From Octopus bimaculoides (lineage: Eukaryota), in NCBI RefSeq assembly GCF_001194135.2, contig NC_068982.1, forward strand, positions 15,788,595-15,852,594: a DNA stretch of 64,000 nucleotides. The letters are read 5' to 3'. Within the stretch, counting starts at the first letter, position 1. Each line of letters starts with the position of its first letter. Under the pieces are notes generated by a model that saw only the letters and a list, made by a program, of their open reading frames with translations, had not been told where the DNA came from and ran no database searches. A program made the position numbers and the translations under genes. Of this stretch, positions 16,509 to 60,326 are shown piece by piece.

Positions 16509-16608
16509 GTTGTTGTTGTTGTTGTTGTTGTTGCTGTTGTTGTTATAATTATTGTTATGTTCCACTTTTGTTGTTTTTGCAGATAACAAGATAGAGGCTC
16601 TTAAAACT

Positions 16609-16710
16609 ATGGCAGCTGTCAAACGGATTAAGGTTTATATCACAATTCTAAAGAGTGGATATTTAACCAAAGTGAACCAGGGGAATCTGAGTTCCTTAAA
16701 TCTTATGTCA
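16609..16710 (+). CDS. Coding exon: PH domain beta1 (MAAVKRIKVYITILKSGYLTKVNQGNLSSLNLMS)
   Basis: Acceptor ttttgcag ends 16582; ATG in strong context aaaactATGG at 16609; ILKSGYLTK is a typical PH start; donor gtaagt at 16711, phase 0. The exon begins at 16583 and may be coding from there. Confidence 0.8.
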
Positions 16711-17449
16711 GTAAGTAAACTTGTCGAATCTTTCTTCCCCAAATTTTTAACAAATTTCACNNNNNNNNNNNNNNNNNNNNNNNNNNNNNNNNNNNNNNNN
16801 NNNNNNNNNNNNNNNNNNNNNNNNNNNNNNNNNNNNNNNNNNNNNNNNNNNNNNNNNNNNNNNNNNNNNNNNNNNNNNNNNNNNNNNNNNNNNNNNNNNN
16901 NNNNNNNNNNNNNNNNNNNNNNNNNNNNNNNNNNNNNNNNNNNNNNNNNNNNNNNNNNNNNNNNNNNNNNNNNNNNNNNNNNNNNNNNNNNNNNNNNNNN
17001 NNNNNNNNNNNNNNNNNNNNNNNNNNNNNNNNNNNNNNNNNNNGGGGGGAGAAGAATTGACCTCAGTGCTTGAATGACACTGTATTTGTTGTTCCAACAT
17101 AATCATCATCATCATTATTATCATCATCATCGTTATCATCATCAGTTTAACGCTCACTTTTCCATGCTTGTATGGCTCAGATGGAATGTGTTGAGACAGA
17201 GTTTTCTTTGGCTGGATGCTCTTCTTGTTGCCAACCCTCACCTTTTTCCAAATAAGGTAATATTTCCCAATGGCCAGACTTGTTTAACATGAAAGAGTGG
17301 AAATGAAGGACACCACTTCCCTAAAGATAACACTCATTTACAACTCTCACAAGATGAAAATTAAAACTAACCTCCGTAGGATTTGATCCGTTACACAGAA
17401 ACCTAGAACAAATATCACAAGCCATTCTACTCTCCTCAACTAATTTTTT

Positions 17450-17910
17450 CATAAAAAGGACCCATACCAATTCCACATAAAAGGCACCTGTGCCAGTGCT
17501 ATGTATAGAGCACCTGGGCTGGTGCCACGTAAAAGGCACCTGCGCCAGTGCTATGTATGGAGCCCCTAGGCTGGTGCCACATAAAAGGCACAGAGCACCT
17601 GGGCTGGTGTCACATAAAAAGCACAGAGCACTTGGGCTAATGCCACATAAAAGGCACCCGTGCCAGTGCTGTGTAAGGAGTACTTGCAATGATGCCACAT
17701 AAAAAGCACCCATCCTGGTGCCATGTAAAAAGCAGATGGAGTGGGGCCACTTAAGAACACCTATGCTAGTGCTACGTTTAAATGTCCCCAGTACACCCTG
17801 TAAAATGGTTGGCATTAGAAAGGGCATCCACCTATAGAAACCATGCCAAAATAGATTCAAGTCATACCATCATGGAAAATGAATGTTAAATGATGATGAT
17901 GATGATGATG
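17450..17910 (+). mobile_element. Family C copy with ~7 irregular internal repeats
   Basis: ccac(a/g)taaaaggcacc core at ~17477, 17524, 17577, 17608, 17644, 17695 and 17721; (GAT)n tail at ~17890. Confidence 0.8.
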
Positions 17911-18542
17911 TGATCAATACACAGAGTATAAAAGTACATTCCAAGAATTTTTCTGATAACAAACATATATTTCTTTATTTTCAATCTGTGATAACCTTAT
18001 TGAGTATTAGAATTATGGTATTTTGGAGTATAGGACAGATGTTTAGTGTATACAGTAATTGAATATGAGAGAATTTACTATTTTAAACCAAAGAAATGTA
18101 TTTCTTACATTTTATGAAAATGTGATTCTGTGGAATTAAATTTCTGGTTTGTTAATTTAGATGGAATGGTAGATATGTGTTTATATTTCAAACAAAATAA
18201 AACGGCCAAAAATGAAAAAAAGAAATACAAAGATTTATGAGGCAATGGGATTCCGTTGAGGATATTCTTCGTATTATTGTCATTAAACTGAGATATCAGA
18301 AAACAGACTTTTCGTTCTTTCCCCAGATTTCTTAAATCACACCCTATTGTCTTTAAAAGAAAACAAAAATAAAGAATAGGCATTATTGGATAATGAGATA
18401 TTCAAGTATTTTGCTCCAACCCTATTCTTGATATTCATCATCAGCATCACAATATCTTCTCTCCCTCCTCTGTGTGTGTATGTGTGTGTAATGTTAACGT
18501 TTGTTTTTGTGTGCAGTTATAATGATTTCTTTATTTATTCTT

Positions 18543-19215
18543 TGTGGAGGCACAATGGCCCAGTGGTTAGGGCGGCAGGCTTGCGGTCGTAGGATTGCAG
18601 TTTCGATTCCCAGACCGGGTGTTGTGAGCGTTTATTGAATGAAAACACCTAAAGCTCCACGAGGCTCTGGCAGGGGATGGTGGCGAACCTTGCGGTACTC
18701 TTTCGCGACAACTTTCTCTCAATCTTTCTTCCTGTTTCTGTTGTACCTGTAATTCAAAGAGCCAGCCTTGTTACACTGTGTCATGTTGAATCTCTCTGAG
18801 AGCTATGTTAAGGGTACACGTGTCTGTGGGCTGCTCAGCCATTTGCACGTTAATTTCACGAGCAGGCTGTTCCTTTGATCATATCAGCTGGGACCCTCAT
18901 TGTCATAACTGATAGAGTGCTCCTTTGTGGAGACCCAATGGCCCAGTGGTTAGGGTCGTGGACTCGCGGTCATAGGATCGTGGTTTCGATTCCCAGAATG
19001 GGTGTTGTGAGTGTTTAACGAAAACACTTGAATGCTCCATGAGGCTCCGGCAGGGGATGGTGGTGAACCCTGCTGTACTCTTTCACCACAACTTTCTCTC
19101 ACTCTTTCTTCCTGTTTCTGTTGTGCCTGTATTTCAAAGGGCCAGCCTTGTCACACTTTGTATCACACTGAATCTCCCGAGAACTACGTTAAGGGTACAT
19201 GTGTCTCTAATGGAG
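18543..19215 (+). mobile_element. Tandem pair of tRNA-derived SINEs (family D here)
   Basis: Heads tgtggaggcacaatggcccagtggttaggg (18543) and tgtggagacccaatggcccagtggttaggg (18926), with B box gtttcgattccc and collinear bodies; the second is 3'-truncated. Confidence 0.85.
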
Positions 19216-20628
19216 AAACCAGTAAACTAGGAATCAAAGGGGTGTATAGGTAAAAAATGGATTAAATGATCACAGTTGGAGATTTCCTCTGTACCTGATT
19301 TTCTATGTTGACCTGAGGTCACACATTGTAGAAGGGAAGGGTTTGAGATCAGTTTTAATCAATTCCAATTAATGATTGACATTAATGAAAATTATTGTTA
19401 ACATTGGCAGGATTTGAATTCCAAATGTAGGCAAAAATGGAGTTTAACTGTATAAGGTTTTCTTCACTTCCATTTTTTTTTAGTACAAGAATCAATGATT
19501 TAAGTGAAGATCGTTCTCTTCATTAAGCATTTTATTTTAATTAATTACCGCTTTACTATTAATTCCTCTTGCAACCGGAATGCCAGGGTACATTTTTATA
19601 GTTGTTCTTTTAAGTTAATAGAACACGGCTTTGAGTTCATTCACAAAATCTTTACCATTGTAGTTGTTCTAAGATTTAGCACTCATAATTGTCACTCTTA
19701 CCGTTTTTCTTTATATTTATATCTTTATTAACAGAAGCAGTCATTAAGATAATAATTGTTTTAATCAATAAAGGTGTAATTTTAATTAATTAGAATTTCT
19801 TAGCTTTTTACATTGATTATGTTAGCACCCACTTTTATCAAACAGTGTACGACATTTAACTTAGCACATTCTATCACTTTTGCATCTAATTCCATATGCT
19901 GTTAGTTATTCTAGTATTAAAGCATAAAAGAATATATAATTCTTTTACTCTTTTACTTGTTTCAGTCATTTGACTGTGGCCATGCTGGAGCACTGCCTTG
20001 TTGTGTTTTAGTCAAACGAATTGACCCCAGGACTTATTTTTTGAGCCTGGTACTTATTCTCTCAGTTTCATTTGTTAAGTTACGGAGACATAAACATATC
20101 AACGCCAGTTATCAAGTGGTGATGATGGTCAAGTGTCAGATGATGACAGGTTAGAGAGTGACCAAGGGACAGAGAAGCAAGACACCTATTTCTGCCTGTC
20201 TGTCTGTCTGTCACACTCTGACCTTTCATCATCAGACACAAGATCCCCTTCCTCCAATGCCCCGTCCCTCTCAAAATTCCTTGTCTTGCGAGTTACTTGG
20301 TGACTCTGCCAGTGCTGATGCCACGTAAAAAGGCATCTAGTCCACACTGTAAAGTGGTCGGCATTTGGAAGGGCATCCAATGGTGAAAATCATACCAAAA
20401 TGGACCTTGCCTGTGCTAGTGCCACGTAAGAAGCACTCTGTCCACTCTGCGGAGTGGTTGGTGTTAGGAAGGGCATCCTGCCATAAAAACCCTGCCAGAA
20501 CAGACACAGTAGCCTGGTGCAGTGTTCTGCCTAGTCAGCTCTTGTCCACTGTCCTACCCATGCAAGCATGGAAGCAGAATGTTAAATGATGATGAGGAGG
20601 AGGATGGGGAGGGGGAACACAGACACAA

Positions 20629-20664
<36 letters not shown>

Positions 20665-24400: not shown

Positions 24401-24499
24401 TGGAACGGTTTCTGTGTAAAAAGAAATGTTATTTATTTTATTTGTTATGTCTTCATGAAAAGGGTATTTCTCATGGACCTTGACAGCCTTCTGGGACCA

Positions 24500-27690: not shown

Positions 27691-28844
27691 AAAACAAAGA
27701 TAGTGATCTGGCAGTCCCACTGTGTGGCACATTGGGCAAGTGTCTGCTACTATAGCCTCGGGCCAACCAAAGCCTTGTGAGCGGATTTGGTAGATGGAAA
27801 CTGAAAGAAGCCCGTCGTATATATATATATGTATATATATGTGTGTCTGTGTTTGTCTGCCCTACATTGCTTGACAACCAATGCCGGTGTATTTACATAC
27901 CCATAACTTAGCAGTTCAGCAATAGAGACCGATAGAATAAGTACTAAGCTTACAAAGAATAAGTCCTGGGGTTGATTTGTTTGACTAAAGGTGGTGCTCC
28001 AGCATGGCCACAGTCAAAGACTGAAACAAGTAAAAGAGTATGCCGGACAAACTGTTTGGTAACATGTCATGTCTCTATGTTCTGAGATTAAATTCTACCA
28101 AGATTGACTGTGCATTTGTCTCTTTTGGGTTCAATGTAATAAGTACCAGTTAACTTCTGGGGTCAATGTAACTGACTCTCCCCTTCCTTCAAAATTTCAG
28201 GCTTTGTATCTATAGCAGAAAGAATTATTTGTATTGGTGAAGACAGGGAATTGCCAGAATTGTTAACATGCCACACAAAATGCTGCCAAGCATTTCGTCT
28301 GTCTTTATGTTCTGAGTTCAAATTTCACTAAGGCGGACTTTGGTTTTCATCCTTCCAGGGTCAATGAAATAAGTACCAGTTGAACACTTGGGTTGATGTA
28401 ATTAACTAACAATATCTCATGCAATATCTCAGGCCTTGTACCTAAAGTAGAAAGAATTATTTGTAATGGTTATAATCAGAAGAATAAGACCTCTACTCAT
28501 AATCTTTTGTTGTACCTGTGTCTGAAAATGATTGCATGAAATTCCTCTAGACCTGAGACCTGTCCCCAAAGTTTGCAACAAAGACATTCAAAGGTCAAGT
28601 CTTGCTTTGGCATGATTTTTACAGCTGGATGCTCTTCCTGATGCCAAACATTTTCACAGAGCAGAATGGGTGCTTTTAACACGATATCAACACTTCGCTC
28701 CAATATAGTTTTAGATATTCTTATTTAAGGTAATTTCGGCTGCTATTCCTCCCAGATCAAATGGAAAAAAAAAAAAAAAAAAAAAAATCCTTTTTTTATT
28801 CCTTCAGAGAAATATTCCTTTTTCTACATTAATCATCCTCTAGA

Positions 28845-29290: not shown

Positions 29291-30430
29291 ATTAAGGCGT
29301 TTTAGTATCGATAAGTCTGACCTAGAATAAGGCAGCATTCTCTCAGAATTGTTACCATGTTGGATAAAATGCTTGGTGGTGTTTTTCTCGACTTTACGTT
29401 CTGAGTTCAAATCCCACTGAGGTCGACTTTGTCTTTCATCCTTTCAAGGTCAATAAAACAAGTACCAGTTGAGCGCTGGGATTAATGTAATCGACTGACC
29501 TCTCCTACCCTCAAAATTGCTGGCCTTGTGCCGAAATTTGAAATCAATATGCTTGGTTTAAGCCTTTAGCATTCAGATTACTCTGTTGAATGTAACGCTT
29601 ATTTTGTTCTTTTACATGTTTCAGTCATTTGACTGTGGCCATGCTGGAGCACTGCCTTTAGTCGAACAAATTGACCCCCAGAACTTATTCTTTGTAAGCT
29701 TAGTNNNNNNNNNNTGCCTTTAGTCGAACAAATTGACCCCCAGAACTTATTCTTTGTAAGCTTAGTACTTATTCTATTGGTCTCTTTTGCTGAACTGCTA
29801 AGTTACAGGGACGCAAACACACCAACATCGGTTGTCAAGCGACGGTGGAGGAGGGGACAAACACATATATATATATTCGATGGGGGCTTCTTTCAGTTTC
29901 CGTCTACCAAATCCACTCACAAAGCTTTGGTCGGCCCGAGGCTATAAGAAGACACTTGCCAAGGTGCGACACAGTGGGACTGAACCTGGAACCATGTGGT
30001 TGGTAAACAAGCTACTTACAACTCAGCCACTCATTTATATTGTTTTGAATTTATCCTGCGTTGTCTTGTAGCTTTGAAATTTTGATGAAGTGATTATTTA
30101 TTTTTAGAATGACATTGTAGAGTAAGTGTGAGAGGTCAGATCTGGCCAGTTTGAACATATAACAAGTAGAATATTTTGGCCAGAGATCATCATCATCATC
30201 GTTTAACGTCTGCTTTCCATGCTAGCATGGGTTGGACGATTTGACTGAGGACTGGTGAAACCGGATGGCAACACCAGGCTCCAATCTAATTTGGCAGAGT
30301 TTCTACAGCTGGATGCCCTTCCTAACGCCAACCACTGGCGAGTTTAAATGTAACAGGGTTAAAAGAATAACTTGAATATCGTCTCACAAATAATATATTC
30401 ATTTTGCTTCTTTTTTTCATTTAATTCCAG

Positions 30431-30654
30431 AACCGAAATGTTGTCCGATGGTTTATATTTGGTTTACGGAACAAAGTATTACCATTTCTTGAAACTTATG
30501 ACACATCTGAGAATTGGAAGAAGAAAAAGCCTCTTCATTATTATGACTTAGCGGAATGTAAGCAAATCACATACAACGCAGGGAGTCACCTTACGAATTA
30601 TTCATTTTGTTTGTTGTTACCTGACAAGGTTTTAGAGCTGAAAGCAAAAAATAG
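30431..30654 (+). CDS. Coding exon: PH domain core (NRNVVRWFIFGLRNKVLPFLETYD...DLAECKQITY...YSFCLLLPDKVLELKAKN)
   Basis: ttccag acceptor, gtaaat donor, 224 nt open (phase 0 to 2). RWF, LETY and FCL..LELKA match PH strands beta2-beta7. Missed by the ORF track (no Met). Confidence 0.88.
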
Positions 30655-32832: not shown

Positions 32833-34033
32833 TTAGGTTGTTTCACGTGAAATGTCACATTTTTAATTACTTGTTATTTGTCATTTAAAAACTCAATTAT
32901 GTATACCTTGCATTTAATCTTGACTCTTTTTCTTTCCCAACAATATTGGTATACAAAATTCGTACCCACAGACCTTATGAAAATTATAACAACCAATCTA
33001 TGTTGAGTGATTTTCTCGTATGAGTACGAACTGGGTCACTCTGCCGCAGAAGCTCTACAGAATATCAAGCGGGACTTTGTTAATGGTTTTGTTGACATAA
33101 GAACTGTTCAGAGATGATTCCAAAGCTCTCGTCCAGGAGATGATAGCCTTGAAAATAAATCAGTTATTTGGCATGATGGATTAAATGCTTTGGTTGAACA
33201 AAATCCGAGAATAAAGGTTTGAAAACTTTCTCCAGAACTCCAGACATCTTTGCACAACTGTCTTTGGACATCTGTGAAGACAGATAGGTTTGTTCCGTGT
33301 CATTTGAACGAGATTCAAAAAACAGATGCCTTGAAGTGAGCTCCTTATTGTTTTCCCAACTGGAAAAAGATCATATTTGCATCAAGTCATTACTTGTGAT
33401 GAGAAATGGATACTCTTTGACAACAGCAAGAGAACAGGACAGTGATTAGATGCAGGGGAGTCACCTAAACCCACCATTGCACCCTAAAAAGTTAGTGGTC
33501 ACTGTATAGTGGGTCTGCAAAGAGAGTTATTCATTATTCATTTTTGCAACAAGGAAAAACGGTAACAGCAACATCGTATTGCCAAGAAATTGATTGTATG
33601 CATGAGAATTTGAAAAAGAAGCAACTCAGACTAGTGAATAGAGATGGCCCAATTTTGCTCCATGACAATGCATGTCCTCACACTCTTCCAGCTACGGTCC
33701 AAAAGTTGCAAAGCCTGAATTATGAGAGTTTGCAACATCCTCCAAATTCTTCTGATATCTCTCCTACTGATCATCACTTATTTAAGCATTTTGAGCTTTT
33801 CACAAGCAATAAAACATTCTTAAATAGAGAAGAGGTAATTGAAGCATTCGGACAGTTTATCACAGCAAAAGATGAATTTTTTTTAAAGATGGAATATATG
33901 GCATAGAGAAACGTTGGGTAAGCGTCATAAATGAATATGGATCATACTTTGATTAAATAAATCAGTTCTCTAAGACTTCTGAAACATTTTATTGTTACCT
34001 TTCAAATATGACATTTCATGTGAAACAACCTAA
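32833..34033 (+). mobile_element. Near full-length mariner transposon, transposase disrupted
   Basis: TIRs ttaggttgtttcacgtgaaatgtca / tgacatttcatgtgaaacaacctaa flanked by TA. Motifs YELGHSAAEA, WILFDN, LLHDNACPH, SPTDHHLF (mariner D,D34D type), with stops and frameshifts. Confidence 0.93.
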
Positions 34034-35904
34034 TAGAAGTTTTAAGAACTTCATAATAAGAAAGCAGTAAAATAAAAACATTAAATATGTACATTTTGTG
34101 AAATTTCACATTTAAGCTTCTACTCCTTCCAAATACTATGAAAGAATGATTATCTCCGTTGTATTAACTGTCCACTAGGCTACACCATGTGTTTAAAAAT
34201 GATATGGATCATGATTAAAATAATCATTCTGATAGCAGGGGAAACAACACCAAAATTTAAATTAATTATAATTAATTAAACATGGAATGTAATGGGGGAG
34301 TGAATCTTATCATTAGCAATACAGTAGACAACTTCAGACATGTTTCAGTATTATTGGATTTCATCAGACTTGGATGGCATTATCTTAGAATGACAAAAGA
34401 GATTTAGGACTTTTGTGAATGAACTCAGAGTTTGTTTATTTGTTTCAACATCTGTTTATCTCTGCTAACAAGGGTTTGGTCAGTGAGATATTTTCTCTTT
34501 TCACTTTTATTCATTTCAGTCATTAAGCTATCGCCATGCTGGAGCACTATCTTGGAGAACTTTAATCGAATGAATCTATCTCAGTACTTTTTTTTTAAAG
34601 CCTAGTACATCTTCTATTGGGGACATAAACACGCTAACACAGGTTGTCAACCAGGGTTTGGTACAAACAGAGACACAAAGACACACACATCTATACTCTT
34701 TTACTCTTTTACTTGTTTCAGTCATTTGACTGCAGCCATGCTGGAGCACTGCCTTTAGTTGAGCAAATCGACCCCAGGACTTATTCTTTGTAAGCCTAGT
34801 ACTTATTCTTATTTCTTTATTGCCCACAAGGGGCTAAACATAAAGGGATTACATCGACCCCAGTGCGTAACTGGTACTCCAAAAGGATGAAAGGCAAAGT
34901 CGACCTTGGCAGAATTTGAACTCAGAACGTAGCGGCAAGCGAAATACTGCTAAGCATTTCACCCAGCTTGCTAACGTTTCTGCCAGCTCGCTGCCCTAGT
35001 ACTTATTCTATCAAGCGATGTTGGGGGAACAAACACAGACACACACATATACACATACGACAGGCTTCTTTCAGTTTCCGTCTACCAAATGCACTCACAA
35101 GGCTTTGGTCGGCCTGAGGCTATAGTAGAAGACACTTGTCCAAGATGCCACACAGTGGGACTAAACCCGGAACCATGTGGTTCGTAAGCAAGCCACACAG
35201 CCACTCCTACGCTTATATATATATATATACATATATATTTATATAGAATATACACCCACATGTCATCGCCACTGATGGCAATGGTGATGGTGGTGGTGGA
35301 AAGGATAATGACATACATATACGACCGACTCATGCTGTTTTTGTGTGTCTACAAAATTCCATTTATAAAGATTTGGTGCTATAATACAAGACATTGGCCT
35401 AAGGTACTGGAACCATGCTGCTGTAAAAAAGAACTTCACCACCAAATGGTTCTGCCTACATCTAACACCAATTAGAGAGCTAATATCTGCCATGATATTT
35501 ATCACAAGGTCCACCCCAGATATTAGTTAAATATAAAGGAAAATACTGAATTACAGAAATAAAAAAAAGAAACAATTCTGTCTTTTCACTTATTGTTATA
35601 CCATTTTCTCATGGTGCCATTTCATAGACAGAAACTTGTCTACATGAAACAGCCATTTATCCAAGATCTATCTATCTGTTTGTCTATCTATCTATCTATC
35701 TGTCTACAGGCACAGGCATGGCTGTGTGGTAAGAAGCTTTCTTCTCAACTACATGGTTCTAAGTTCAGTCCCACTGTGTGGCACCTTGGACAAATGTCTT
35801 CTTCTGTAGCCTCAGGCCAGCCAAAGCTTTGCAAGTGGGTTTGGTAGATGGAAACGAAAGAAGCCCATCATATAAGTAGATAAATAAATAAATATGTGTG
35901 TGTA

Positions 35905-37800: not shown

Positions 37801-38069
37801 GTAGTTTAGTTCCCGAATGAATTCTTGTCTTTTATCAACAGAACCACAACTAAAATGAGCTGAGTTTTCACCTCATGCAACTGAAACAAAAAACAAAAAA
37901 AAAAAAGAAATTTCTCTTTACAGAGAAAAAAAAAAAAGTTGGTCTTCGTTTACATTTGACGATGCAGCAGTTTTTCTCTCTGAAATGAAGAGGAACTATT
38001 TCTGTAGTCAGAACTCTTCTCTCTCTCGTTCAGTCTTTTTGTTGTCTGACTTGGTAAAATGTAGTAGAA

Positions 38070-39300
38070 TATCTCTCTCTCTCTCTCTGTCTCTTCCTCT
38101 CTCTCTCCCTCTCTCAAACACACTCACAAATATTACCTCTCTCTCTGTCTCACTCACAAATATAGTCGTCCCTCTCTCTCTCACACACACACTTCTCTGT
38201 CTCTCCCTCTCTCATACACACACTTCTCTGTCTCTCCCTCTCTCATACACACACACACACACAAATATTACCTCTCTCTGTCTCTCCCTCTCTCAGACGC
38301 ACTCACAAATATTACCTCTCTCTCTCTCTCTCACTTACAAATATAGTCGTCCCTCTCTCTCTCACACACACTTCTCTATCTCTCCCTCTCTCAGATACAC
38401 TCACAACTATAGTCGTCCCTCTCTCTCTCACACACACACTTCTCTGTCTTTCCCTCTCTCATACACACACACACACAAATATTACCTCTCTCTCTCTGTC
38501 TCTCCCTCTCTCAGACGCACTCACAAATATTACCTCTCTCTCTCTCTCACTTACAAATATAATCGTCCCCCTCTCTCTCACACACACTTCCGTCTCTCCC
38601 TCTCTCATACACACACACACACACACAAATATTACCTCTCTCTCTCACTCATACAAATATAGTCGTCCTTCTCTCTCTCTCACACACACTTCTCTCTGTC
38701 TCTGTCTCACCCTCTCTCATACACACACACACAAATATTATCTCTCTCTCTCACTCATACAAATATTGTCCTCCCCCCCTCTCTCTCACACACACTTCTC
38801 TTTGTCTCTCCCTCTCTCATATACACACATTCACAAATATTACCTCTCTCTCTCTCACTCACACAAATATAGTCCCCCTCTCTCTGTCTTTCACACACCT
38901 CTCTCAGACATACTCACAAATATTACCTCTCACACATACAAATACAGTCTCTCTCTCTCTCTCTTTTTCATACTCATACACAAATATAGTCTTTCCCTGT
39001 CTCTCACACACAAAAATACTCTCATTTCCTCTCTCTATTTCACTTGCTCTCTCTCTCTCTCTCTCTCTCTCNNNNNNNNNNTCTCACACACACACACACA
39101 CTCACTTACAGATGTAGTAAATGTACTCTCCCCACTCACTCTCATACACACACATACAAATCTAGTAAACCCCTCTCTCACATACATACAGTCATAAATG
39201 TGGTCTCTCTCTCTCTCTCTCTCTCTCTCTTTCACACTTTATTTCTCCTACAAACATACTCACACAGGGAAACACATACAGTCTATCTCTCACTTTCTCT
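38070..39300. repeat. Compound (CT)n/(CA)n minisatellite
   Basis: Recurring linkers acaaatattacc and acaaatatagtcgtccc between (CT)n and (CA)n runs. Confidence 0.85.
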
Positions 39301-40556
39301 TCCTTTCTTTTTTTTTTTCAATTTGGTATATTTACAGTTTTAGAAGAACATTACCAAAGTATGCTTTCTTCCTCAATAAACAAAAAAGTGCTACTCAACT
39401 ATCTACTATTTTTTGTATTTGGAGACCACACACACACAAACACATAAGCATGCATGCACATACAGAATACACTTGCATTCATAGATACACACATCAAAGC
39501 ATTGATGTATATATGCACATACATGTTGAATATAGACTGGATGTGAATATTTGCATCTTCAGTGCAAAAGAGTTCTACTCTAGTTAATCATGTCTGATAG
39601 ATGTTTGGTTCTGCTTATGGCAGAGAGAAGTTAGACCTTGCACAAAACTGTTTAGCAACTTAGTTTGGCCAAAACCTGGTCCTTAATCATGATATTCTAA
39701 TTATCCTCATCTTGTTATTATTATATTAATTGTGCTCTTCTTATTTTGACTTATGAGCCCCTTCTGACTTTTGTGGTAAGTAGCTTGCTTACCAACCACA
39801 TGGTTCCGGGTTCAGTCCCACTGTGTGGCACCTTGGGCAAGTGTCTTCTACTATAGCCTCGTCAGTGGATTTGGTAGATGGAAACTGCCCAAGGTGCCAC
39901 GCCGTGGGACTGAACTTGGAACCACACAGCCATTCCTGTGCCTACATATATATGTATATATATATATCATTTTCAATACACAATTATAAAAGTGCAACTT
40001 ATCCTGTCATGCTTTAAAATACATTAAATTGACTAACTTATATAACATGTCAAGTATCTCCAAGCAATCTGTCAGATACAGTTCATAACGTTAGATGTAG
40101 TTTTTGCATTGGAGTAGGTATATTTTTGGGGTTTTCTACTACACACATACATACACACACACAAACACATATATAAGAGAGGTTAATAACACAGTATTCA
40201 ATGTTTTAATAAGATGTCCATGTTAAGTTGGATACACAGATTACCTTTTAGCATTAATAGTGCTTCCATCACTAATAATTAAATTTTATTAGTCAGCTGG
40301 ATATTTGTAACTTCGTTATCTGAAAAGATGGTGTTGTTCTTTATATCATAACAGTGAGATTTGACTGGCATGTGGTGACTGGATGCCTCCAACTGATGAT
40401 TTTCAGTAGAATGAAATCACGATATGGGAATTGCAGCACCCACGACAGACAATTCTCGTCTGCTATGATCTGTGTGTGAGAGGGTCTCTCGAGGCTAATA
40501 ATGCAGTATATGCTGTTCTAATAAGACATCCATGTTGTGTAGGATATAAAGATTAC

Positions 40557-48010: not shown

Positions 48011-49863
48011 GTGAAGGCACGTGGCTTAGTGGTTAGGGTGTTGGACTCATGATCGTAAGATTGTGGTTTCAAATCCTGGACCAGGCAATGTGTTGTGTTG
48101 TTAAGCAAGACACTTCGTTTCACATTGCTCTGTCCACTCAGCTGGCTAAAATGAGTAATACTGCGACAGACCAGCATCTTGTTCAGGTGAGGAATATATA
48201 TGCCATGAGACATAGGCTTACAAAGAATAAGTCCTAGGGTCGATTTGCTTGACTAAAAGCGGTGCTCCAGCATGGCCACAGTCAAATGACTGAAACAAGT
48301 AAAAGAGTGGAAAGAGTAAAAGAGCCAAGACAGTAAGAATGTCAGACAGGATGCCTTGTGGTATTTCTTCTGGACTTTTGTATTCAAAGTTGAAATCCCA
48401 CTGCGCCCTATTTGGATGTCACCCAGTTTAATCTGTCTGATACCAACCTGCCTGACACTACCCCTGGAGGATCTATGACAGATAATTCATGTTTTATAAT
48501 AGTTTAACCGTTTAACATTTAAACTAGCCATATCCATTTCATATATTCTGCTTGTTTTATATCTAGACTGGCCAAATCTGGCCTCTCACACCTACCTTAC
48601 AATATCTATCTGCATGGGGTGGGGGTATGCACTGTAACAATGTCACTACGTTCATCATTTGTTGGTGATTCCCTCCTATTTCTGCCAGATGACACCTTTG
48701 CATCACTCAAGCAACAACCTTCCAACTCTTGGGTCTGTTTGGGTGGTCATTGTTGAAGAGGGTTTTACGAGGTTGGAGTGCAATGCCCACCACGACCTCT
48801 TTTAGCTGTATTTTATGACATCCAAGTCATGCCGGTCCCAACAATGTCATTCTCAAAATGATCAATCACACGAGAAAAATCTTGAAGTTACATGATAATG
48901 CATAATTAATTCAAAGTAATGTGAATAAATAAGAATTACCTTTGACAGACTAATCTGAACGCTGAAAGTTTAAATTAAAATCTTTCTTTAAAATCTCAAA
49001 TCAATTTATGTTTCAAGCACTCGCTTATTAACAACAAGCAGAGACTACTATCTTTTTCAAAAATCAAGCCAACATTGGGTAATGTAAACCTAGATACACG
49101 ATGTCTGGAAAATAGTAAAAAGCAAAAATAAAAAGCAAGAATAAAAGATAAAATGGGAACATCACAGCTGGAATATATTTGATCATCGATTTACTGAATT
49201 AGGGCTGACATGTGACTAAACAAAAATAATAATAATAATAACAATAATAATAATAATAATAATAACGAGCAGTAACCAATACAAGGAAGCGATTTTTGTA
49301 GAATAACTATAGGATTGCTGATTGCCTACATAATACCACAGACATGAAAATAGATTACAGCATATAATTTGGTAAAGGAATCAAAAACAAACAACCCCAA
49401 ACACCAGAAAAGAGAAAAAAACAAAATGGAGATTTTAATGTAAATTGTAATGATTTTTTTTTTTTCCACCCTCAGACAAAATACATATATATTGTATTGT
49501 TCAAAACCATTTTCCATTGGGATGGCATCTGGAGCCAAATATTTGAATTTTCTAACAGAGTAATATATGTAGATGAATGGTAGTTTTGAGAATGTTTAAG
49601 ACGTTGGAATCTGACTTATCAAAACTTATTAGACTTTCAGCTCATTACGTCAGTTTATATGTCACTTGAAGTTTTACTCACAAACTTCCATTTTCAATTT
49701 TTTCTTTTTCTTTCTAAAACACACACATATATATAAATGTATGTATATAAAAAAAATATATAAATATATGTACTTACACACACGTGTGCACACACACACA
49801 CACACACATACATATTATACATATACGTGGAGAGACAGAATCATTCTCTCTCTCTCTCTCTCT

Positions 49864-49912
<49 letters not shown>

Positions 49913-50518
49913 NNNNNNNNNNNNNNNNNNNNNNNNNNNNNNNNNNNNNNNNNNNNNNNNNNNNNNNNNNNNNNNNNNNNNNNNNNNNNNNNNNNNNNNN
50001 NNNNNNNNNNNNNNNNNNNNNNNNNNNNNNNNNNNNNNNNNNNNNNNNNNNNNNNNNNNNNNNNNNNNNNNNNNNNNNNNNNNNNNNNNNNNNNNNNNNN
50101 NNNNNNNNNNNNNNNNNNNNNNNNNNNNNNNNNNNNNNNNNNNNNNNNNNNNNNNNNNNNNNNNNNNNNNNNNNNNNNNNNNNNNNNNNNNNNNNNNNNN
50201 NNNNNNNNNNNNNNNNNNNNNNNNNNNNNNNNNNNNNNNNNNNNNNNNNNNNNNNNNNNNNNNNNNNNNNNNNNNNNNNNNNNNNNNNNNNNNNNNNNNN
50301 NNNNNNNNNNNNNNNNNNNNNNNNNNNNNNNNNNNNNNNNNNNNNNNNNNNNNNNNNNNNNNNNNNNNNNNNNNNNNNNNNNNNNNNNNNNNNNNNNNNN
50401 NNNNNNNNNNNNNNNNNNNNNNNNNNNNNNNNNNNNNNNNNNNNNNNNNNNNNNNNNNNNNNNNNNNNNNNNNNNNNNNNNNNNNNNNNNNNNNNNNNNN
50501 NNNNNNNNNNNNNNNNNN

Positions 50519-50962: not shown

Positions 50963-51026
50963 ACAAGAAATGATGGAATGGGTACGAATATTGGAGAAGA
51001 CACTGAGTTCTTTGGGCTTAATTCAG
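50963..51026 (+). CDS. Coding exon: PH C-terminal helix (R-QEMMEWVRILEKTLSSLGLIQ)
   Basis: (CT)n-tttacag acceptor, gtgaga donor, 64 nt, phase 2 to 0. EMMEWV..L has the conserved PH helix Trp. Confidence 0.88.
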
Positions 51027-53695: not shown

Positions 53696-54399
53696 CACTT
53701 TATATTTATCCAAGAATAAAGGCAGAAATAACAGAACGTTGGGTTCGATATTTTTTTATCTGAGTCCTACTTTACAAATATGGATACTAATCATAATAAA
53801 GTTAATATTACCTTTGATATTTCAGAGATTAATTAATCATATATTGGTAATATATCATAATTGATTCAAGTAATTAAGACACAGACAATAAAAAAAATCT
53901 ATCTTTAACTTCTGTTGTGTGTGCGGAGAGTCATTCTCTTTTAGTGCCTTATAATTTAACACATTCACCAGTCTGATTTCCACTCATTTACTTATTTATC
54001 CACTCACAAGGCTTTGGTCAGCCTGAGGCTATAGTAGAAGACACTTGCCCAAGCTGCCATGCAGTGGGACTGAACCCAGAACCATGTGGTTCGTAAGCAA
54101 GCTACTTACCACACACCCACTCCTACGCCTATACTGGCTGCCTTTTAAATGACACTGGCATATGTGCCACTGGCATGGGTGCCTTCTACGTGCCACCAGC
54201 ACTGGCCATGGCTATGATTTTTCACTGAGCCTTAACACCGACTAAAGGCGGTGCTCCAGCATGGCCACAGTCAAATGACTGAAACAAGTAAAAGAGTACA
54301 CTCTTGGAGCAGTTAGCATCAAGAATGACATCCAGCAATAGAAACCAAGCCAAAACGGACTGGTGCCTGGTGCAACTCTCTGGCTTACTATCTCCAACC

Positions 54400-54618
54400 A
54401 ATCTTTTAATTGACAATAAACCTATTTGTTAAATACTGTTAAATAAATAAATGTAAAAATATATGTTATTTTAAGCAAATATTTATGTATAAATTTCATA
54501 ANNNNNNNNNNATAAAAAGTATTTGCTGTCCACGGACCCCCGTCTTGTCCTTGCGGACCCCGTCTTGTCCTTGCGGACCCTCTGTGGTCTGCGGACCACA
54601 GTTTGAAAACTGCTGGTC
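54400..54618 (-). mobile_element. hAT-type MITE inserted in a SINE-like repeat
   Basis: Reverse terminus ccagcagttttcaaactgtggtccgc; internal ~20-bp tandem duplication (gtcttgtccttgcggacccc). Host repeat resumes at aacccatgccagcatgg. Confidence 0.55.
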
Positions 54619-54857: not shown

Positions 54858-56875
54858 GCTGATTCTAAGGAGCATATCTATGTCCTGGACCCTTTGCCAC
54901 CACCAACTCTGCGTAACAAGGAAGAGACACCTCCTTCATCCGTTTCATCCCCTAACAGATACAGCTCTTCCTCGTTGTCGTCCCTGGAACTAAACTTTCC
55001 CGAACACCAACCACCACCTCCGCCACGCCCCATCGAATTAATCATGGAGTCACTACCCGCAACCCCACCACGAACTTCCCCGCCTCCAATCTCCACCGTA
55101 CTAACACCGCCTCCACCTCCCCCACTCCTACCACCTACAGGTGCCCCTCCACCACTGCCACTAACAACACCTCCACCACTGACATCACCTCCGCCTCCAC
55201 TGCTGCCTACATCACCATCACCGTCATCATCAGTGCCACAGACTCTCTCTGCAGCTGCTGCGGCAGCAGTTGTCACAACCAAACTAGCTCCAGGACAACA
55301 TTTAGACACCAGCATCTCAACAGAATCCCCACCTATTCCATTACGGGAAAATAAACGCAATTTGATGAATAGAAACATTACACACCGGTTCTCCTTTTCT
55401 GATTTTGGTACAGTTCAAACTAACATTCCTTCTACGTCTCATTTGGCGGCATTACATCCTGAAATAAATAAAAGAGCTCTTCGGGTAAAATCTGAAGTTT
55501 ATCACAACACACCGCCATCATATCATTCTGTGGTGTCCCGAGAGAATTCAGAAAGCAATGAAATCGTATATGTCAGCGACAGAGACAATAATTTTCAATG
55601 CAGGGAACAAAATGACAAAACATTCGGTGGGTCAAGAGACAGTATAGAAAGCGAGCATTCTTGGGAAGGAGATAACATATATGGCTATACTTGTGATGGA
55701 CGTACTTTGATCCCCAATTCCAAGACCGATCTTGTTTATTCTTACCCAGCTAATTTCAAAGTTTGTGATTTTCAGAAGTATGTCATTCATAGATCTCAAG
55801 AATTAACCACTTCTGATGATAATACTTCATTTCATCAAAAGAAATATTTGAAAGATAGCGCCAGTGAAGAAACCAATGCTAATTCTGCTGTGTTACCATC
55901 TTCTACAAACTTTTTTCCAGATTCTTCACCTTTTAAATGTGCTAGTTCTCCCACGTCACCACAATCGAAAAAATATCATAAACTCTCTTCTCGGGAAATG
56001 AAAGAAATTGACTCACTGCCATGGTTTCCTGGTTTCGGTGCCAAACCAGACCAAAGCCGTCTTTCATCATCAATGTTTAATTCTTCAAGTTCTGGTGTAA
56101 GTTATGAACTTCAGTTAGAGAATGCTGAGCAAAATGCTACAAACATCATTAACAATAATGTGACGTGCACCTCATGCAAACATAGAAATTGTCTTTCTTC
56201 TGCCAATTTCCCAAAGAATGGTATTAATTCAATTGCTAAACCAGAACAAATACTTTACAATAGGGAATTCCTTTCAGAAAACCTTGATCGGTTGAGCTTA
56301 GCTCCAAATAATCAAAATTCAAGATATTCAAACAGTAATATCAGTTCAGATGACGACCTTCACATGCAAAACAGCCAACATATGCAAAACAGCCAACATA
56401 TGCAAAACAGCCAACATGTGCAAAACAGCCAACATGTGCAAAATAGCCAACATGTGCAAAATAGCCAACATGTGCAAAACACGCAACATTCAGCACCGGT
56501 AGCTTTACCTCCTCAACCCCAAATCCCTGCTAAACCACCTGTAAATATTCCTCCTGCGCAAGAAGAGCCTGAAGATGTTATGCCTCCTTTACCTCCTCCT
56601 CGAATACCCAGACGTAGTGATATCTTTCCTCCACGGAGACCACCCCGTCCTAACAGCTTTGTTCCTAAATCTCGCGATCAGCAAACTGAGAACGATTTAG
56701 AAACTGCTTCTTCGGATGAAAGCTTGGACAATGCTCCTCATTTTGTTACAAATCTAGCCATGAGTCAAGTTTTACAACTCAAAGAAGAGCTCAAAAAAAC
56801 AAATGGCTTGACAATTTCTGTATCTCGAACAGATATATATAACATTGCTTTCGTGGAATATGCTAAGAAAATTTG
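54858..56875 (+). CDS. 2018-nt coding exon: Pro/Ser-rich linker plus start of first PDZ-like domain
   Basis: Within the 692-aa ORF 54801-56879. Real start after ttttcag at 54858 (ADSKEHIY); donor TG|gtaag at 56876 precedes the ORF stop. Confidence 0.92.
56361..56486 (+). repeat. Coding minisatellite, 7 x 18 bp (H[M/V]QN[S/T]Q)
   Basis: ca(c/t)(a/g)tgcaaaa(c/t)agccaa repeated: 3 HMQNSQ, 3 HVQNSQ, 1 HVQNTQ. Confidence 0.95.
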
Positions 56876-57169
56876 GTAAGTTCTCATTCTTTATCATCTT
56901 TCAACGTTATATTTCAAAATTCTTTCAATAATTTCCATACAAAGTGATTAAATTTATCTCAAAATTAATTCTTGTGTTTCAAATAATTCTATCTATCAAT
57001 CGTTCTATCTATCTATTTGTCTGTCTAGCTATCTATCTCTCTCTCTATATATATATACATAGAGAGAGATATATAAACATACATACATAAACACAAATAC
57101 AGTGCACACACACACACACATGTATAAATGTAATCATGGCGATTTTGTTTTTCTCTTTTTTACTTCCAG

Positions 57170-57410
57170 GGTTGCTGGCTGGAATCAAAGAGAATGCCCT
57201 AATCTTTACCATATTTTACATGTTGGGGATGAACTTCTCTGCTTGAACAAAGTCACTGTTGATTCTATATCTTGGTTAAAATCCCTTATAAAAAAATCAA
57301 ACCAGTTTGATTTGGAAATAAAAAGAATACCAAAGGGTCAATTATATATAATCAAAAAAGAAGTTGAAGGACAGTCCCTTGGTATACAAAATGATTCCAA
57401 AACCGGAGAA
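57170..57410 (+). CDS. Coding exon: PDZ-like 1 C-half and PDZ-like 2 N-part (VAGW...LHVGDELLCLN...LEIKRIPKG...SLGIQ)
   Basis: ttccag acceptor, gtgagt donor, 241 nt, phase 2 to 0. LHVGDELLCLN matches the PDZ L-x-x-GD-x-I-x-x-x-N motif; SLGI is a GLGF-type loop. Confidence 0.9.
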
Positions 57411-58570: not shown

Positions 58571-58604
58571 CAGTCGGTTCGATTACGATTTCAGATTTAA
58601 AATT

Positions 58605-58975: not shown

Positions 58976-59412
58976 CTTGTGTCATGCAAAAAACATACAT
59001 TACACTCTGCAAAAGTGGTTTTGCTTAAGGAAGGGTATCCAACCATACAAACCGTACTAAAACAGATGACTGAAGCCTGGTGCAGCCCTCCAGTTTGCCA
59101 GCTCCTCTCAAGCCATCCAACCCATGCCAGCATGGAAAACAGACGTTAAATGATGGTGATGATGGTAGCACTCATCTAACATCCCAATGTGGTCTTTACT
59201 GCATTTATACACTTTTTGCTATAGAAACCACTACATGCTACTTTATTCAAGAGAGATCATATTCTGAGGTTTGGTGCTAAAAAAGTCTTCTCAAATCTCA
59301 AGAATTTATTTTTAGGATTTTTCATGAAACTGTAAGGTAGAATAAAACTAAAATGTCCCTTACCTGAAAAAACCAATAAGGGTTTGCAGCAGAAAGGGCA
59401 TCTAGCTGTATA

Positions 59413-59586
59413 AAAAATAAATAAATGCGCCCTTTTTAAAGCCTAGCCAGGCTCATGGGCCCAGTTTCCCGGTTACAATGGCGTATGTGTTCCCCAGCTG
59501 GACGGGATGCCAGTCCATCGCAGCGTTACTCATTTTTGCCAGCTGAGTGGACTGGAACACCCTAACCACTCAACCACGTGCCTCCA
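59413..59586 (-). mobile_element. Internally deleted family E SINE with 14-bp target-site duplication
   Basis: catctagctgtata at both 59399-59412 and 59587-59600; (TTTA)-like tail. Confidence 0.8.
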
Positions 59587-59905
59587 CATCTAGCTGTATA
59601 ATGATACCTTAATAACAAGTATTCATCTGATCCATGCTAACATGAAAACCAGGCATAAAACAAACAAATTTAGCTTGGAATGTGTATGGCCATGCTGATA
59701 ATCTTTGATACTTAAACCAGATATTAAAAACATCAATAAAATCACTATCAAAAATATTCATCCTTACAGCATGTTTTTCTCCAGTGCTTAATTAATCAGC
59801 TTTTATGTTATTTTCAGTCTCCAAACATTATTCGTATTTTTTTTTTCAATCATTAACATTTTATCAAAATTGTTATTGTTAGTTTTTAAACCATTGTTAT
59901 TTTAT

Positions 59906-59940
<35 letters not shown>

Positions 59941-60128
59941 TAACTTCTAAGGTTACTTGTTGTAGCCTGATGTTAGGAATTTTTTTCTTTTCCAACAGTC
60001 TAATCTGTTGTGTGTATATGAATAATAATAATATCCAGGAGTTATGATAAAACCTGTGATAAAAAGAAAAATAATAATTATTATTATTGTTGTTATTATC
60101 AATATTATCATCATTACTATTATGGTTA

Positions 60129-60165
<37 letters not shown>

Positions 60166-60182
60166 CATTATTATATTTCTAG

Positions 60183-60326
60183 ATTCTTTCTGTTGAACCT
60201 TCGGGCTTAGCTGGCAGACAAGGCATGCAATCAACTCCAGGTAACAAGACGAAAGATAAACTGAATCACTGGGTATTCACAGAAATTAACAGTCGACCAT
60301 TAAATCTGTTTGCAAATTACACACAG
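60183..60326 (+). CDS. Coding exon: PDZ-like 2 (ILSVEPSGLAGRQGMQSTPGNKTKDKLNHWVFTEINSRPLNLFANYTQ)
   Basis: tttctag acceptor, gtaagg donor at 60327, 144 nt, phase 0 to 0. V-x-P-x-G-L-A-x-R-x-G is the PDZ betaC/alphaA motif. Not in the ORF track. Confidence 0.85.

What the first reader, a model, noticed from the sequence alone, without database searches (positions are those of the whole stretch)
16583..60326. Hidden six-exon gene for an unnamed PH - disordered linker - tandem PDZ scaffold
The ORF track shows only the 692-aa and 113-aa pieces. Hand splicing adds four more exons and gives a complete PH domain, spread over ~34 kb with introns of 13.7 and 20.3 kb. It is followed by a long docking-type linker and a PDZ pair. 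Seen: splice sites, phases and an open frame. Established: N-terminal PH plus a Pro/Tyr-rich tail is the Gab/Dos/IRS docking layout; those proteins lack PDZ domains, while CNK and syntrophins place PDZ before or inside the PH. Inference: a poorly characterised invertebrate adaptor linking phosphoinositide binding, SH3/WW/SH2 docking and PDZ cargo binding.
Basis: partly seen in the sequence, partly recalled or inferred. Interest (0 to 1): 0.75.

Follow-up and report, generated by a model that had tools for sequence, protein, structure and literature searches.

The report
Octopus PH plus syntenin-like PDZ scaffold
The six hand-spliced exons are a real octopus gene for an adaptor protein with a membrane-lipid-binding PH domain, a long floppy proline-rich linker and a syntenin-like pair of PDZ domains. 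The family is found in many animal phyla but nobody has studied it, and the gene model itself is already predicted in a sister octopus.

Summary
All six exons have AG/GT borders and compatible phases, and none touches an N run. The Octopus sinensis RefSeq protein LOC115223138 (954 aa, "uncharacterized") matches every junction. The window is colinear with the gap-free O. sinensis locus across every assembly gap. Substitutions in the domain exons are almost all synonymous (pN/pS 0.01-0.03).

The PH domain passes Pfam's cutoff and folds as a PH domain. The PDZ pair fails Pfam, but a family profile finds syntenin-1 in the PDB (E 2.6e-10). A confident AlphaFold model superposes on the syntenin PDZ tandem (E 5e-11).

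Three corrections:
- The gene is not complete in the window. A seventh coding exon (41 aa, the end of PDZ2 plus a C-terminal helix) lies about 1-3 kb past base 64000.
- The linker is Pro/Ser-rich, not Tyr-rich.
- The gene is not hidden from databases.

The family (663 representatives) runs from a sponge to amphioxus. Every name I could inspect is a placeholder or a composition-driven misnomer. I saw no vertebrate, fly or worm gene name, but I could not check that exhaustively.

Verdict: a real, ordinary gene of an uncharacterised but widespread scaffold family.

The parts
16583..16710 (+). Exon 1. It starts after an AG acceptor, so at least one non-coding exon probably lies upstream. ATG is at 16609. 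It encodes aa 1-34, PH strand beta1 (KSGYLTK).
   Evidence: Splice sites and frame. 100% nucleotide identity to O. sinensis over the CDS. tblastn.
30431..30654 (+). Exon 2, aa 35-109 (ends in phase 2). Core of the PH beta-sandwich (RWFIF...LETYD...FCLLL...LELKA).
   Evidence: Pfam PH aa 14-122.
50963..51026 (+). Exon 3, aa 109-130. C-terminal helix of the PH domain (EMMEWVRILEKTL).
   Evidence: helix 109-125 in the model.
54858..56875 (+). Exon 4, aa 131-803 (ends in phase 2). Disordered Pro/Ser-rich linker, then the helix preceding PDZ1 and the first strands of PDZ1.
   Evidence: pN/pS 0.14 against O. sinensis.
54870..54899 (+). Conserved post-PH motif EHIYVLDPLP. Y138 is kept in 83% and P142 in 97% of 29 aligned sequences (28 family members plus the window).
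56365..56489 (+). Coding 18-nt tandem repeat, 6.9 copies (H[MV]QNSQ). It is 18 aa longer than in O. sinensis and is the only indel in the coding region.
56583..56612 (+). Conserved PPLPPPRIPRR, a class II SH3-ligand-type motif (PxxPxR). P706, P707 and R712 are kept in 69-86% of the family alignment.
56754..56792 (+). Conserved helix (LAMSQVLQLKEEL) that precedes the PDZ tandem in the model.
   Evidence: H9-21, pLDDT 85-89..
57170..57410 (+). Exon 5, aa 803-883. Rest of PDZ1 (AGWNQ...HVGDELLCLN...), the short R-x-P linker, and the start of PDZ2 including its SLGI loop.
60183..60326 (+). Exon 6, aa 884-931. Middle of PDZ2 (GLAGRQG...WVFTEINSRPL). It ends in phase 0 at a GT donor, and the domain is cut here.
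62037..62104 (+). Repeat-element copy at the position of the 69-nt cassette exon of O. sinensis isoform X1. AG and GT are kept, but this copy is 68 nt, one T shorter, so including it would break the frame.

Best explanation
The window holds the first six of seven coding exons of the octopus orthologue of O. sinensis LOC115223138.

The protein has these parts, in order:
- An N-terminal PH domain of the DAPP1/Akt-like type.
- A roughly 630-residue disordered Pro/Ser-rich linker. It carries a conserved Tyr motif just after the PH domain and a conserved PPLPPxR motif.
- A conserved helix.
- A C-terminal pair of PDZ domains joined by a short R-x-P linker. This pair is homologous to, and predicted to be packed like, the syntenin PDZ tandem.
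- A C-terminal helix and a conserved tail, encoded by the missing seventh exon.

Shown here: the gene structure, the three modules, conservation of the architecture, and purifying selection.

Inferred mechanism: a membrane-proximal scaffold.
- The PH domain would hold it on phosphoinositide-containing membrane.
- The PDZ tandem would capture C-terminal tails of transmembrane proteins, as syntenin does.
- The linker would recruit SH3-domain partners.
- Alternative promoters and 3' exons would give PH-less and PDZ2-truncated forms.
For: Gene model:
- Canonical splice sites and one open frame.
- Junction-for-junction match to the RefSeq orthologue.
- Colinearity with a gap-free locus.
- pN/pS of 0.026 (PH exons), 0.014 (PDZ exons) and 0.14 (linker).

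PH domain:
- Pfam above the gathering score.
- Seven strands plus a helix, with core pLDDT above 93.
- Best structural match is the DAPP1 PH domain: E 7e-7, 28% identity, TM 0.77. phmmer to DAPP1 gives E 2e-5.

PDZ tandem:
- AlphaFold pLDDT 87, pTM 0.84.
- Foldseek to the syntenin tandem: E 5e-11, 190 columns, rmsd 3.0, TM 0.66/0.74. Other PDZ tandems reach only TM 0.3-0.4.
- The family profile hits syntenin-1 at E 2.6e-10 across both PDZs and the linker, and X11/Mint1 at 8e-10.

One mRNA and a conserved architecture:
- cDNA contig L002.
- 84 of 102 long representatives carry the family-type PH domain.
- Pfam finds the PH domain at the N-terminus of brachiopod, amphioxus and hemichordate members at significant scores, and in dipteran members only below the gathering score.

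Linker motifs.
Against: - No transcript data exist for the window's own species.
- No function has been tested in any family member.
- The octopus C-terminal region gives no Pfam PDZ hit at E<=10.
- PDZ1 has Ala where the second Gly of the GLGF loop normally sits (NIAF, Ala in 90% of the family), so canonical peptide binding by PDZ1 is uncertain.
- The cephalopod PH domain reads NVVRWF where deuterostome members read K-K-R-W-F. It has lost a basic residue of the usual 3-phosphoinositide motif, so lipid binding may be weak or different.
- O. sinensis isoform X4 lacks most of the PH domain, so not all products couple the two modules.
Confidence: 0.8

Rival explanations
1. A Gab/DOS/IRS-type phosphotyrosine docking protein. 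An N-terminal PH domain would be followed by a tail whose phosphorylated tyrosines recruit SH2 proteins, with the PDZ pair as a lineage-specific add-on.
For: - The layout is an N-terminal PH domain plus a long disordered Pro-rich tail.
- IRS-1 and DOK2 PH domains appear among the structural matches (ranks 28-30 and 42).
- One tyrosine, Y138, is conserved across phyla.
Against: - There is no PTB/IRS domain at E<=1.
- There is no YxxM and no Gab PxxxRxxKP motif. Only two YxN and one YxxP are present.
- Tyrosine is 2.4% of the linker, so it is not enriched.
- Only Y138 is conserved.
- The PH domain is closer to DAPP1 and Akt than to IRS or DOK.
- The most conserved part of the family is the PDZ tandem, not the tail.
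Confidence: 0.1
2. The PH exons and the linker/PDZ exons belong to different genes or transcripts and were joined by coincidence of phase.
For: - Exons 1-3 are spread over 34 kb, with 13.7- and 20.3-kb introns full of repeats and gaps.
- O. sinensis isoform X4 starts inside exon 3 and lacks most of the PH domain.
Against: - The cuttlefish-type cDNA contig has both modules in one ORF.
- Three of the four RefSeq isoforms join them.
- 84 of 102 long family representatives from many phyla have both.
Confidence: 0.03
3. It is the octopus syntenin (SDCBP) orthologue with an extended N-terminus.
For: Syntenin is the best structural and best PDB-sequence match of the tandem. The match includes the short inter-PDZ linker and a C-terminal helix.
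Against: - Identity to syntenin is only 16-18%. The profile scores 43 bits against syntenin but 110-330 bits against listed family members.
- There are no LYPxL or YPx(n)L ALIX-binding motifs.
- The protein is about 950 aa with a PH domain, whereas syntenin is about 300 aa.
- PDZ2 has an 11-residue insertion relative to syntenin.
- I did not test whether a separate syntenin gene exists in octopus.
Confidence: 0.03
4. A decaying or non-functional locus whose open frame survives by chance.
For: Draft assembly, repeat-rich introns, and a low-complexity linker with a variable coding repeat.
Against: - 931 codons are open across six exons.
- 90 synonymous against 31 non-synonymous differences from O. 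sinensis, with pN/pS 0.01-0.14.
- The family is conserved from a sponge to amphioxus.
Confidence: 0.01

Closest known systems
Syntenin-1 / SDCBP (MDA-9)
   Same: - Two PDZ domains joined by a very short linker (R-x-P-[FH]) and predicted to pack in the same mutual orientation.
- A C-terminal helix follows PDZ2.
- It is the best structural match (E 5e-11, TM 0.66/0.74) and the best PDB sequence match (E 2.6e-10).
   Different: - Only 16-18% identity.
- An N-terminal PH domain and a 630-aa linker replace syntenin's roughly 110-aa N-terminal region.
- No LYPxL motifs.
- An 11-residue insertion in PDZ2.
- An extra conserved helix before PDZ1.
- PDZ1 has Ala in place of the second loop Gly.
X11/Mint (APBA1-3)
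   Same: - A PH-superfold module upstream of a C-terminal PDZ tandem.
- The tandem is detectably homologous (E 8e-10).
- The family also has a conserved extreme C-terminus (mostly ...Y-K-D-Y-I-V-Q). This recalls the Mint1 tail, which folds back into PDZ1 according to the title of PDB entry 1u3b.
   Different: - The upstream module here is a true PH domain at the N-terminus, not a PTB domain next to the PDZs.
- There are no Munc18- or CASK-interacting regions.
- The predicted packing of the tandem resembles syntenin, not Mint1 (TM 0.36).
- The tail ends in Q or G, which is not a canonical PDZ ligand.
DAPP1/Bam32 PH domain, with Akt and TAPP1 PH domains as further neighbours
   Same: - Closest PH domain by sequence (E 2e-5) and by structure (E 7e-7, 28% identity).
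- Both share the GYLTK beta1 motif and the RWF beta2 motif.
   Different: - The octopus domain has V-V-R where DAPP1 has K-T-R before the Trp.
- The rest of DAPP1 (an SH2 domain) is absent.
Gab/DOS and IRS/DOK docking proteins
   Same: An N-terminal PH domain followed by a long disordered Pro-rich region with SH3-ligand motifs.
   Different: No PTB domain, no YxxM, no Grb2-SH3C motif, few and unconserved tyrosines, and a C-terminal PDZ tandem.
Other PH+PDZ proteins (syntrophins, CNK, ARHGAP21/23, Tiam/Sif, P-Rex)
   Same: They combine PH and PDZ modules in membrane-associated scaffolds or regulators. These were the only kinds of PH+PDZ protein the literature search returned.
   Different: - The domain order and companion domains differ.
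- Pfam at E<=1 finds no SAM, CRIC, DH, RhoGAP or DEP domain and no split PH.
- The PDZ here is a syntenin-type tandem at the extreme C-terminus.

Membership tests
PH domain (Pfam PF00169) | Score above the Pfam gathering cutoff. | tested here: met
   32.1 bits against a cutoff of 25.1, E 1.8e-7, aa 14-122 covering profile positions 2-103 of 105.
PH domain (Pfam PF00169) | Seven-stranded beta-sandwich capped by a C-terminal helix. | tested here: met
   AlphaFold model of the window's own exon 1-3 product: strands 11-22, 38-47, 51-57, 70-73, 79-83, 92-96 and 101-105, helix 109-125, core pLDDT 93-97. 65 PDB PH-type matches at E<=1e-3.
PH domain (Pfam PF00169) | Basic K-Xn-[KR]-X-R motif for 3-phosphoinositide binding in beta1-beta2. 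| tested here: inconclusive
   K15, K21 and R40 are present, but the [KR] two residues before R40 is Val in cephalopods. Deuterostome members have KKRWF or TKRWF. The motif definition is from my own knowledge. Binding was not tested.
PDZ domain (Pfam PF00595 / PF17820) | Score above the Pfam gathering cutoff. | tested here: not met
   No hit at E<=10 for the octopus C-terminal region. Relatives give 12-20 bits against cutoffs of 23-27.
PDZ domain (Pfam PF00595 / PF17820) | PDZ fold, present twice. | tested here: met
   Model pLDDT 87. Foldseek hits tandem-PDZ structures over 178-191 columns at E down to 5e-11, and single PDZ domains at E about 1e-3. The family profile hits syntenin-1 at E 2.6e-10.
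PDZ domain (Pfam PF00595 / PF17820) | Carboxylate-binding loop x-Phi-G-Phi. | tested here: inconclusive
   PDZ2 has S-L-G-I (G874 invariant, L873 83%). PDZ1 has N-I-A-F, with Ala in 90% of the family where Gly is usual. Peptide binding was not tested.
Syntenin (SDCBP) family | PDZ1-PDZ2 tandem with a linker of a few residues, packed as one unit. | tested here: met
   The profile consensus rRlPhgkvvairr aligns with syntenin's RDRPFERTVTMHK.
Syntenin (SDCBP) family | Short N-terminal region with LYPxL-type ALIX-binding motifs, in a protein of about 300 aa. | tested here: not met
   No LYPxL or YPx(1-3)L in the window product or in the O. sinensis and cuttlefish orthologues. The protein is about 950 aa with a PH domain. 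The feature definition is from my own knowledge and the abstract of PMC6360254.
Gab/DOS/IRS docking proteins | N-terminal PH domain. | tested here: met
Gab/DOS/IRS docking proteins | Multiple SH2-docking tyrosine motifs (YxxM, YxN, YxxP). For IRS/DOK, also a PTB domain. For Gab, also the PxxxRxxKP motif. | tested here: not met
   No YxxM, two YxN, one YxxP. No PTB or IRS domain at E<=1. No PxxxRxxKP.
X11/Mint (APBA) | PTB domain immediately before the PDZ tandem. | tested here: not met
   Pfam finds only a PH domain, at the N-terminus.
Unnamed PH / syntenin-like-PDZ family (O. sinensis LOC115223138 and relatives) | C-terminal roughly 215-aa module (helix, PDZ1 with AGWNQK...HxGD, R-x-P, PDZ2 with W..TEIN, QPxD helix) plus an N-terminal family-type PH domain. 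| tested here: met
   The window product matches through exon 6 at 93-100% identity to the orthologue. O. sinensis scores 329 bits against the family profile, the top hit. The last about 40 aa of the module are outside the window.

The most novel reading that the evidence does not exclude
This would be a pan-metazoan scaffold family that has never been studied and is a distant sister of syntenin.
- In it, a phosphoinositide-reading PH domain and an SH3-docking linker were fused to a syntenin-type PDZ tandem.
- It may have been lost in vertebrates.
- Its conserved C-terminal tail (...YKDYIVQ in most members) and flanking helices could regulate the tandem within the molecule, as the Mint1 tail does.
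- If so, it would link lipid signalling to sorting of receptor tails in most animal phyla by a route absent from the standard vertebrate models.
Probability: 0.3. Interest if true: 0.55.

Novelty: new variant of a known kind. Interest (0 to 1): 0.35.

Why it matters
- For genome annotation, a bacterial-style ORF track sees only two of seven coding exons of a 50-60-kb gene. Splice-aware reading recovered the rest correctly.
- For biology, the find points to a conserved protein family seen in a sponge, flatworm, nematodes, molluscs, a brachiopod, an annelid, insects, echinoderms, hemichordates and amphioxus.
- The family joins a PH domain to a syntenin-like PDZ tandem. Public records name its members only with placeholders or with misleading composition-driven names (FLO11, mucin-19, mucin-5AC).
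- Syntenin is central to syndecan recycling and exosome biogenesis. A PH-anchored relative is therefore a reasonable candidate for receptor-tail sorting in invertebrates, including cephalopod neurons. That role is inference only.

Tried and rejected
- Pfam on the C-terminal 210-218 aa of three molluscan proteins gave nothing at threshold. Pfam alone would have wrongly rejected the PDZ call.
- A three-sequence profile against PDB sequences gave only E 0.08 to Mint1. A nine-sequence, multi-phylum profile was needed.
- A search of the window for the last exon (41 aa) found only chance matches, best E 0.32. The gap at 62291-62564 cannot hold it, because the exon lies downstream of sequence that aligns to window 63909.
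- The look-up of encoding contigs with isoform X2 found nothing, because only the longest isoform is on record. Isoform X1 worked.
- The third homology search returned mostly short fragments and no informative names.
- Literature searches found no description of this architecture. The terms were LOC115223138, Pdzph1, 'PH and PDZ domain(s)', 'two PDZ domains', CG43707, and the Drosophila PDZ-gene RNAi screen PMC3484668 with its supplements.
- My recollection that Drosophila CG43707 or mouse Pdzph1 might be relatives could not be tested, and I do not rely on it.
- Considered and rejected as family assignments: syntenin orthologue, Gab/IRS member, Mint member, CNK/syntrophin (see the membership tests).

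Full report
**What the window is.** The sequence is AT-rich (GC 0.22-0.44), full of microsatellites and interspersed repeats, and broken by 18 N runs. It is colinear over about 58 kb with a chromosome-scale, gap-free Octopus sinensis locus at 77-95% nucleotide identity. It is therefore an octopus genome from a species other than O. sinensis.

**Checking the observation.**
The exons are 16583-16710 (ATG at 16609), 30431-30654, 50963-51026, 54858-56875, 57170-57410 and 60183-60326.
- All borders are AG|...|GT.
- Exon 1 begins at an acceptor, so at least one non-coding exon should lie upstream. I did not test this.

**Gap test.**
- No exon touches an N run. The nearest case is the run at 16761, which begins 50 nt after the exon 1 donor.
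- Two N runs inside the span, 49913-50518 and 54502-54511, were missing from the scan program's list. Both are intronic.
- A 55-block colinear chain to the O. sinensis locus (0 N) brackets every gap.
- The O. sinensis intervals that correspond to the gaps contain none of its coding exons. The gaps therefore hide no coding exon of the main isoform, and order and orientation are sound.

**Independent support for the exons.**
- O. sinensis XP_029649425.1 (LOC115223138 isoform X2, 954 aa, 'uncharacterized protein') aligns to all six exons in order, switching exon at exactly the predicted residues, at 93-100% identity.
- Against O. sinensis, the PH exons carry 10 synonymous and 1 non-synonymous differences (pN/pS 0.026).
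- The PDZ exons carry 19 and 1 (0.014), and the linker exon 61 and 29 (0.14).
- The only coding indel is three extra copies of an 18-nt repeat.
- A 4730-nt contig from run SRR31864759 carries an uninterrupted 916-aa ORF. It clusters at 90% identity or more with the Acanthosepion pharaonis protein and has both PH and PDZ regions. A gene that spans more than 44 kb in octopus can only appear this way as cDNA. PH and PDZ are therefore on one mRNA, at least in a related cephalopod.

**What is missing.**
- The orthologue continues for 41 aa (VTDRLNSVGMDISFVVQPSDFIKQLRKQLKKMSNFTDYCLG). That exon is not in the window.
- In O. sinensis it lies 1.16 kb downstream of the last block that aligns to window 63909. 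It should therefore sit roughly 1-3 kb past base 64000.
- In the window, PDZ2 stops at the start of its alphaB helix. It lacks the last strand, the C-terminal helix and the tail.

**Isoforms.**
- X1 (977 aa) includes a 23-aa cassette derived from an interspersed repeat.
- X3 (913 aa) ends right after exon 6.
- X4 (866 aa) starts at MMEWV in exon 3 and lacks most of the PH domain.
- The window has a copy of the same repeat at the matching place (62037-62104) with AG and GT kept. It is one T shorter, 68 against 69 nt, so inclusion would shift the frame. A homopolymer error in a draft assembly cannot be excluded.

**The PH domain.**
- Pfam PF00169 scores 32.1 bits against a cutoff of 25.1, and the match is nearly full-length.
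- An AlphaFold model of the window's own exon 1-3 product, built with a 16-sequence family alignment, gives the classic seven strands plus a helix. Core pLDDT is 93-97.
- The nearest solved structures are DAPP1 (E 7e-7, 28% identity), then Akt, STAP1, TAPP1 and others. IRS-1 and DOK2 rank lower. phmmer also picks DAPP1.
- Cephalopods read NVVRWF where hemichordate and some lophotrochozoan members read KKRWF. Lipid specificity is therefore uncertain.

**The linker.**
- It is 630 aa, 14.4% Ser and 13.8% Pro, with 15 Tyr (2.4%, not enriched).
- It has seven PxxPx[RK] motifs, one PPxY, two YxN, and no YxxM.
- Across 28 family members from many phyla, only two linker elements stand out. One is [ED]-H-[IV]-Y-x-x-x-P just after the PH domain. 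The other is PPLPPxR about 50 residues before the C-terminal module.
- There is no PTB domain, no Gab motif and no LYPxL.

**The PDZ pair.**
- Pfam does not call it. The octopus sequence gives no hit at E<=10, and relatives score 12-20 bits.
- A three-sequence profile reached only E 0.08 against Mint1.
- With a nine-sequence, multi-phylum profile, syntenin-1 is the top PDB hit (E 2.6e-10). The alignment runs from PDZ1 through the short R-x-P-[FH] linker to the end of PDZ2. Mint1 scores 8e-10.
- The AlphaFold model of the 218-aa module has pLDDT 87 and pTM 0.84.
- Its top 20 Foldseek hits are all the syntenin tandem (E 5e-11, 190 columns, rmsd 3.0, TM 0.66/0.74). Scribble PDZ34, Mint1 and PSD-95 PDZ12 reach only TM 0.3-0.4. 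Both the two folds and their mutual packing are therefore syntenin-like.
- A helix precedes PDZ1, and a helix plus a packed tail follow PDZ2.
- PDZ2 keeps an S-L-G-I loop. PDZ1 has N-I-A-F, with Ala conserved in place of Gly.

**The family.**
- An exhaustive profile search found 663 cluster representatives at E<=1e-3 and 122 at E<=1e-30. In most of them the module sits at the extreme C-terminus of a 500-1200-aa protein.
- Named members come from Lingula, Babylonia, Batillaria, Lottia and Capitella.
- Insect members include Culex, Anopheles, Glossina, Molorchus and several Hemiptera.
- Nematode and flatworm members are Trichinella, Steinernema, Parascaris and Macrostomum.
- Deuterostome and sponge members are Branchiostoma, Saccoglossus, Glandiceps, Patiria, Antedon, Lytechinus, Amphiura and the sponge Sycon.
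- Every name is 'uncharacterized', 'hypothetical', 'PH domain-containing' or 'PDZ domain-containing', or a composition artefact (FLO11, mucin-19, mucin-5AC, a golgin fusion).
- Of 102 long representatives, 84 carry the family-type N-terminal PH domain.
- I saw no vertebrate, D. melanogaster or C. elegans entry. However, only the top 150 hits are visible and only about 30 clusters could be named, so their absence is not shown.
- Most members end in ...Y-K-D-Y-[IL]-V-Q.

**Mechanism (inference).**
- By analogy with its parts, the protein is a membrane-proximal scaffold.
- The PH domain would anchor it to phosphoinositide-containing membrane.
- The syntenin-type tandem would bind C-terminal tails of transmembrane cargo.
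- PPLPPxR would recruit SH3 proteins.
- The conserved tyrosine could be a regulatory or sorting site.
- Alternative promoters and 3' ends would tune which modules are coupled.
- None of this has been tested in any species. Literature searches found nothing on the gene or the architecture.

**Verdict.**
These are the missing seventh exon, a linker that is not Tyr-rich, a Gab/IRS likeness that is only an analogy of layout, and a gene already predicted in a sister species.
- The gene is ordinary in kind. The family is a fair lead but not a surprise.

Noticed in passing
window 62037-62104 (+). Other copies include 12246-12308, 19966-20037, 27956-28018 (-), 29625-29675, 34722-34787, 48224-48289 (-), 54240-54278 (-) and 63818-63883 (-).: An interspersed repeat whose sequence reads SFDCGHAGA[LP]PLV[EK]QIDPRTYS in one frame occurs at least 10 times on both strands. 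In O. sinensis one copy is used as a 69-nt cassette exon (isoform X1). The copy at the matching place in the window is 68 nt, so it would break the frame if included.
   Followed up: partly
window 56365-56489 (+): An 18-nt coding tandem repeat (6.9 copies, 95% matches) encodes H[MV]QNSQ units. The window has 18 aa more of it than O. sinensis, and this is the only length difference in the coding region.
   Followed up: yes
window 33496-33903 (+), in intron 2: Remnant of a mariner-type transposase ORF of 136 aa (Pfam Transposase_1 PF01359, E 6e-8, partial DDE domain).
   Followed up: partly
window 10096-10437 (-): A 113-aa ORF that looks like part of a transposase, but it has no Pfam hit at E<=0.01.
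   Followed up: partly
window 49913-50518 and 54502-54511: Two N runs inside the finding's span were not in the scan program's list. Both are intronic (introns 2 and 3) and are bracketed by blocks colinear with O. sinensis.
   Followed up: yes
window 13900-15300 and 38000-39600: Strongly C-over-G-skewed low-complexity tracts (GC skew -0.45 and -0.57) give long spurious Pro/Ser/Leu-rich ORFs. These attract chance tblastn hits from the Pro-rich linker.
   Followed up: no
L001 (O. sinensis CM016860.1, 22173250-22255857): The orthologous gene spans 62.6 kb. RefSeq predicts four isoforms, including a PH-less one (X4, starting at MMEWV) and one that ends right after exon 6 (X3). Not all products would couple PH and PDZ or carry a complete PDZ2.
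   Followed up: partly
Family members outside the window: Automatic names such as 'flocculation protein FLO11', 'mucin-19', 'mucin-5AC' and 'Golgin subfamily A member 4' are attached to orthologues. They appear to come from low-complexity similarity or fused gene models and are misleading.
   Followed up: partly
Family C-termini. The octopus equivalent is in the exon beyond the window.: The extreme C-terminus is conserved as ...Y-K-D-Y-[IL]-V-Q. Of 106 tails, 36 end in IVQ, 9 in LVQ and 4 in VVQ. Cephalopods end in CLG or LVG. This may be an intramolecular ligand or a structural cap of the PDZ tandem.
   Followed up: no
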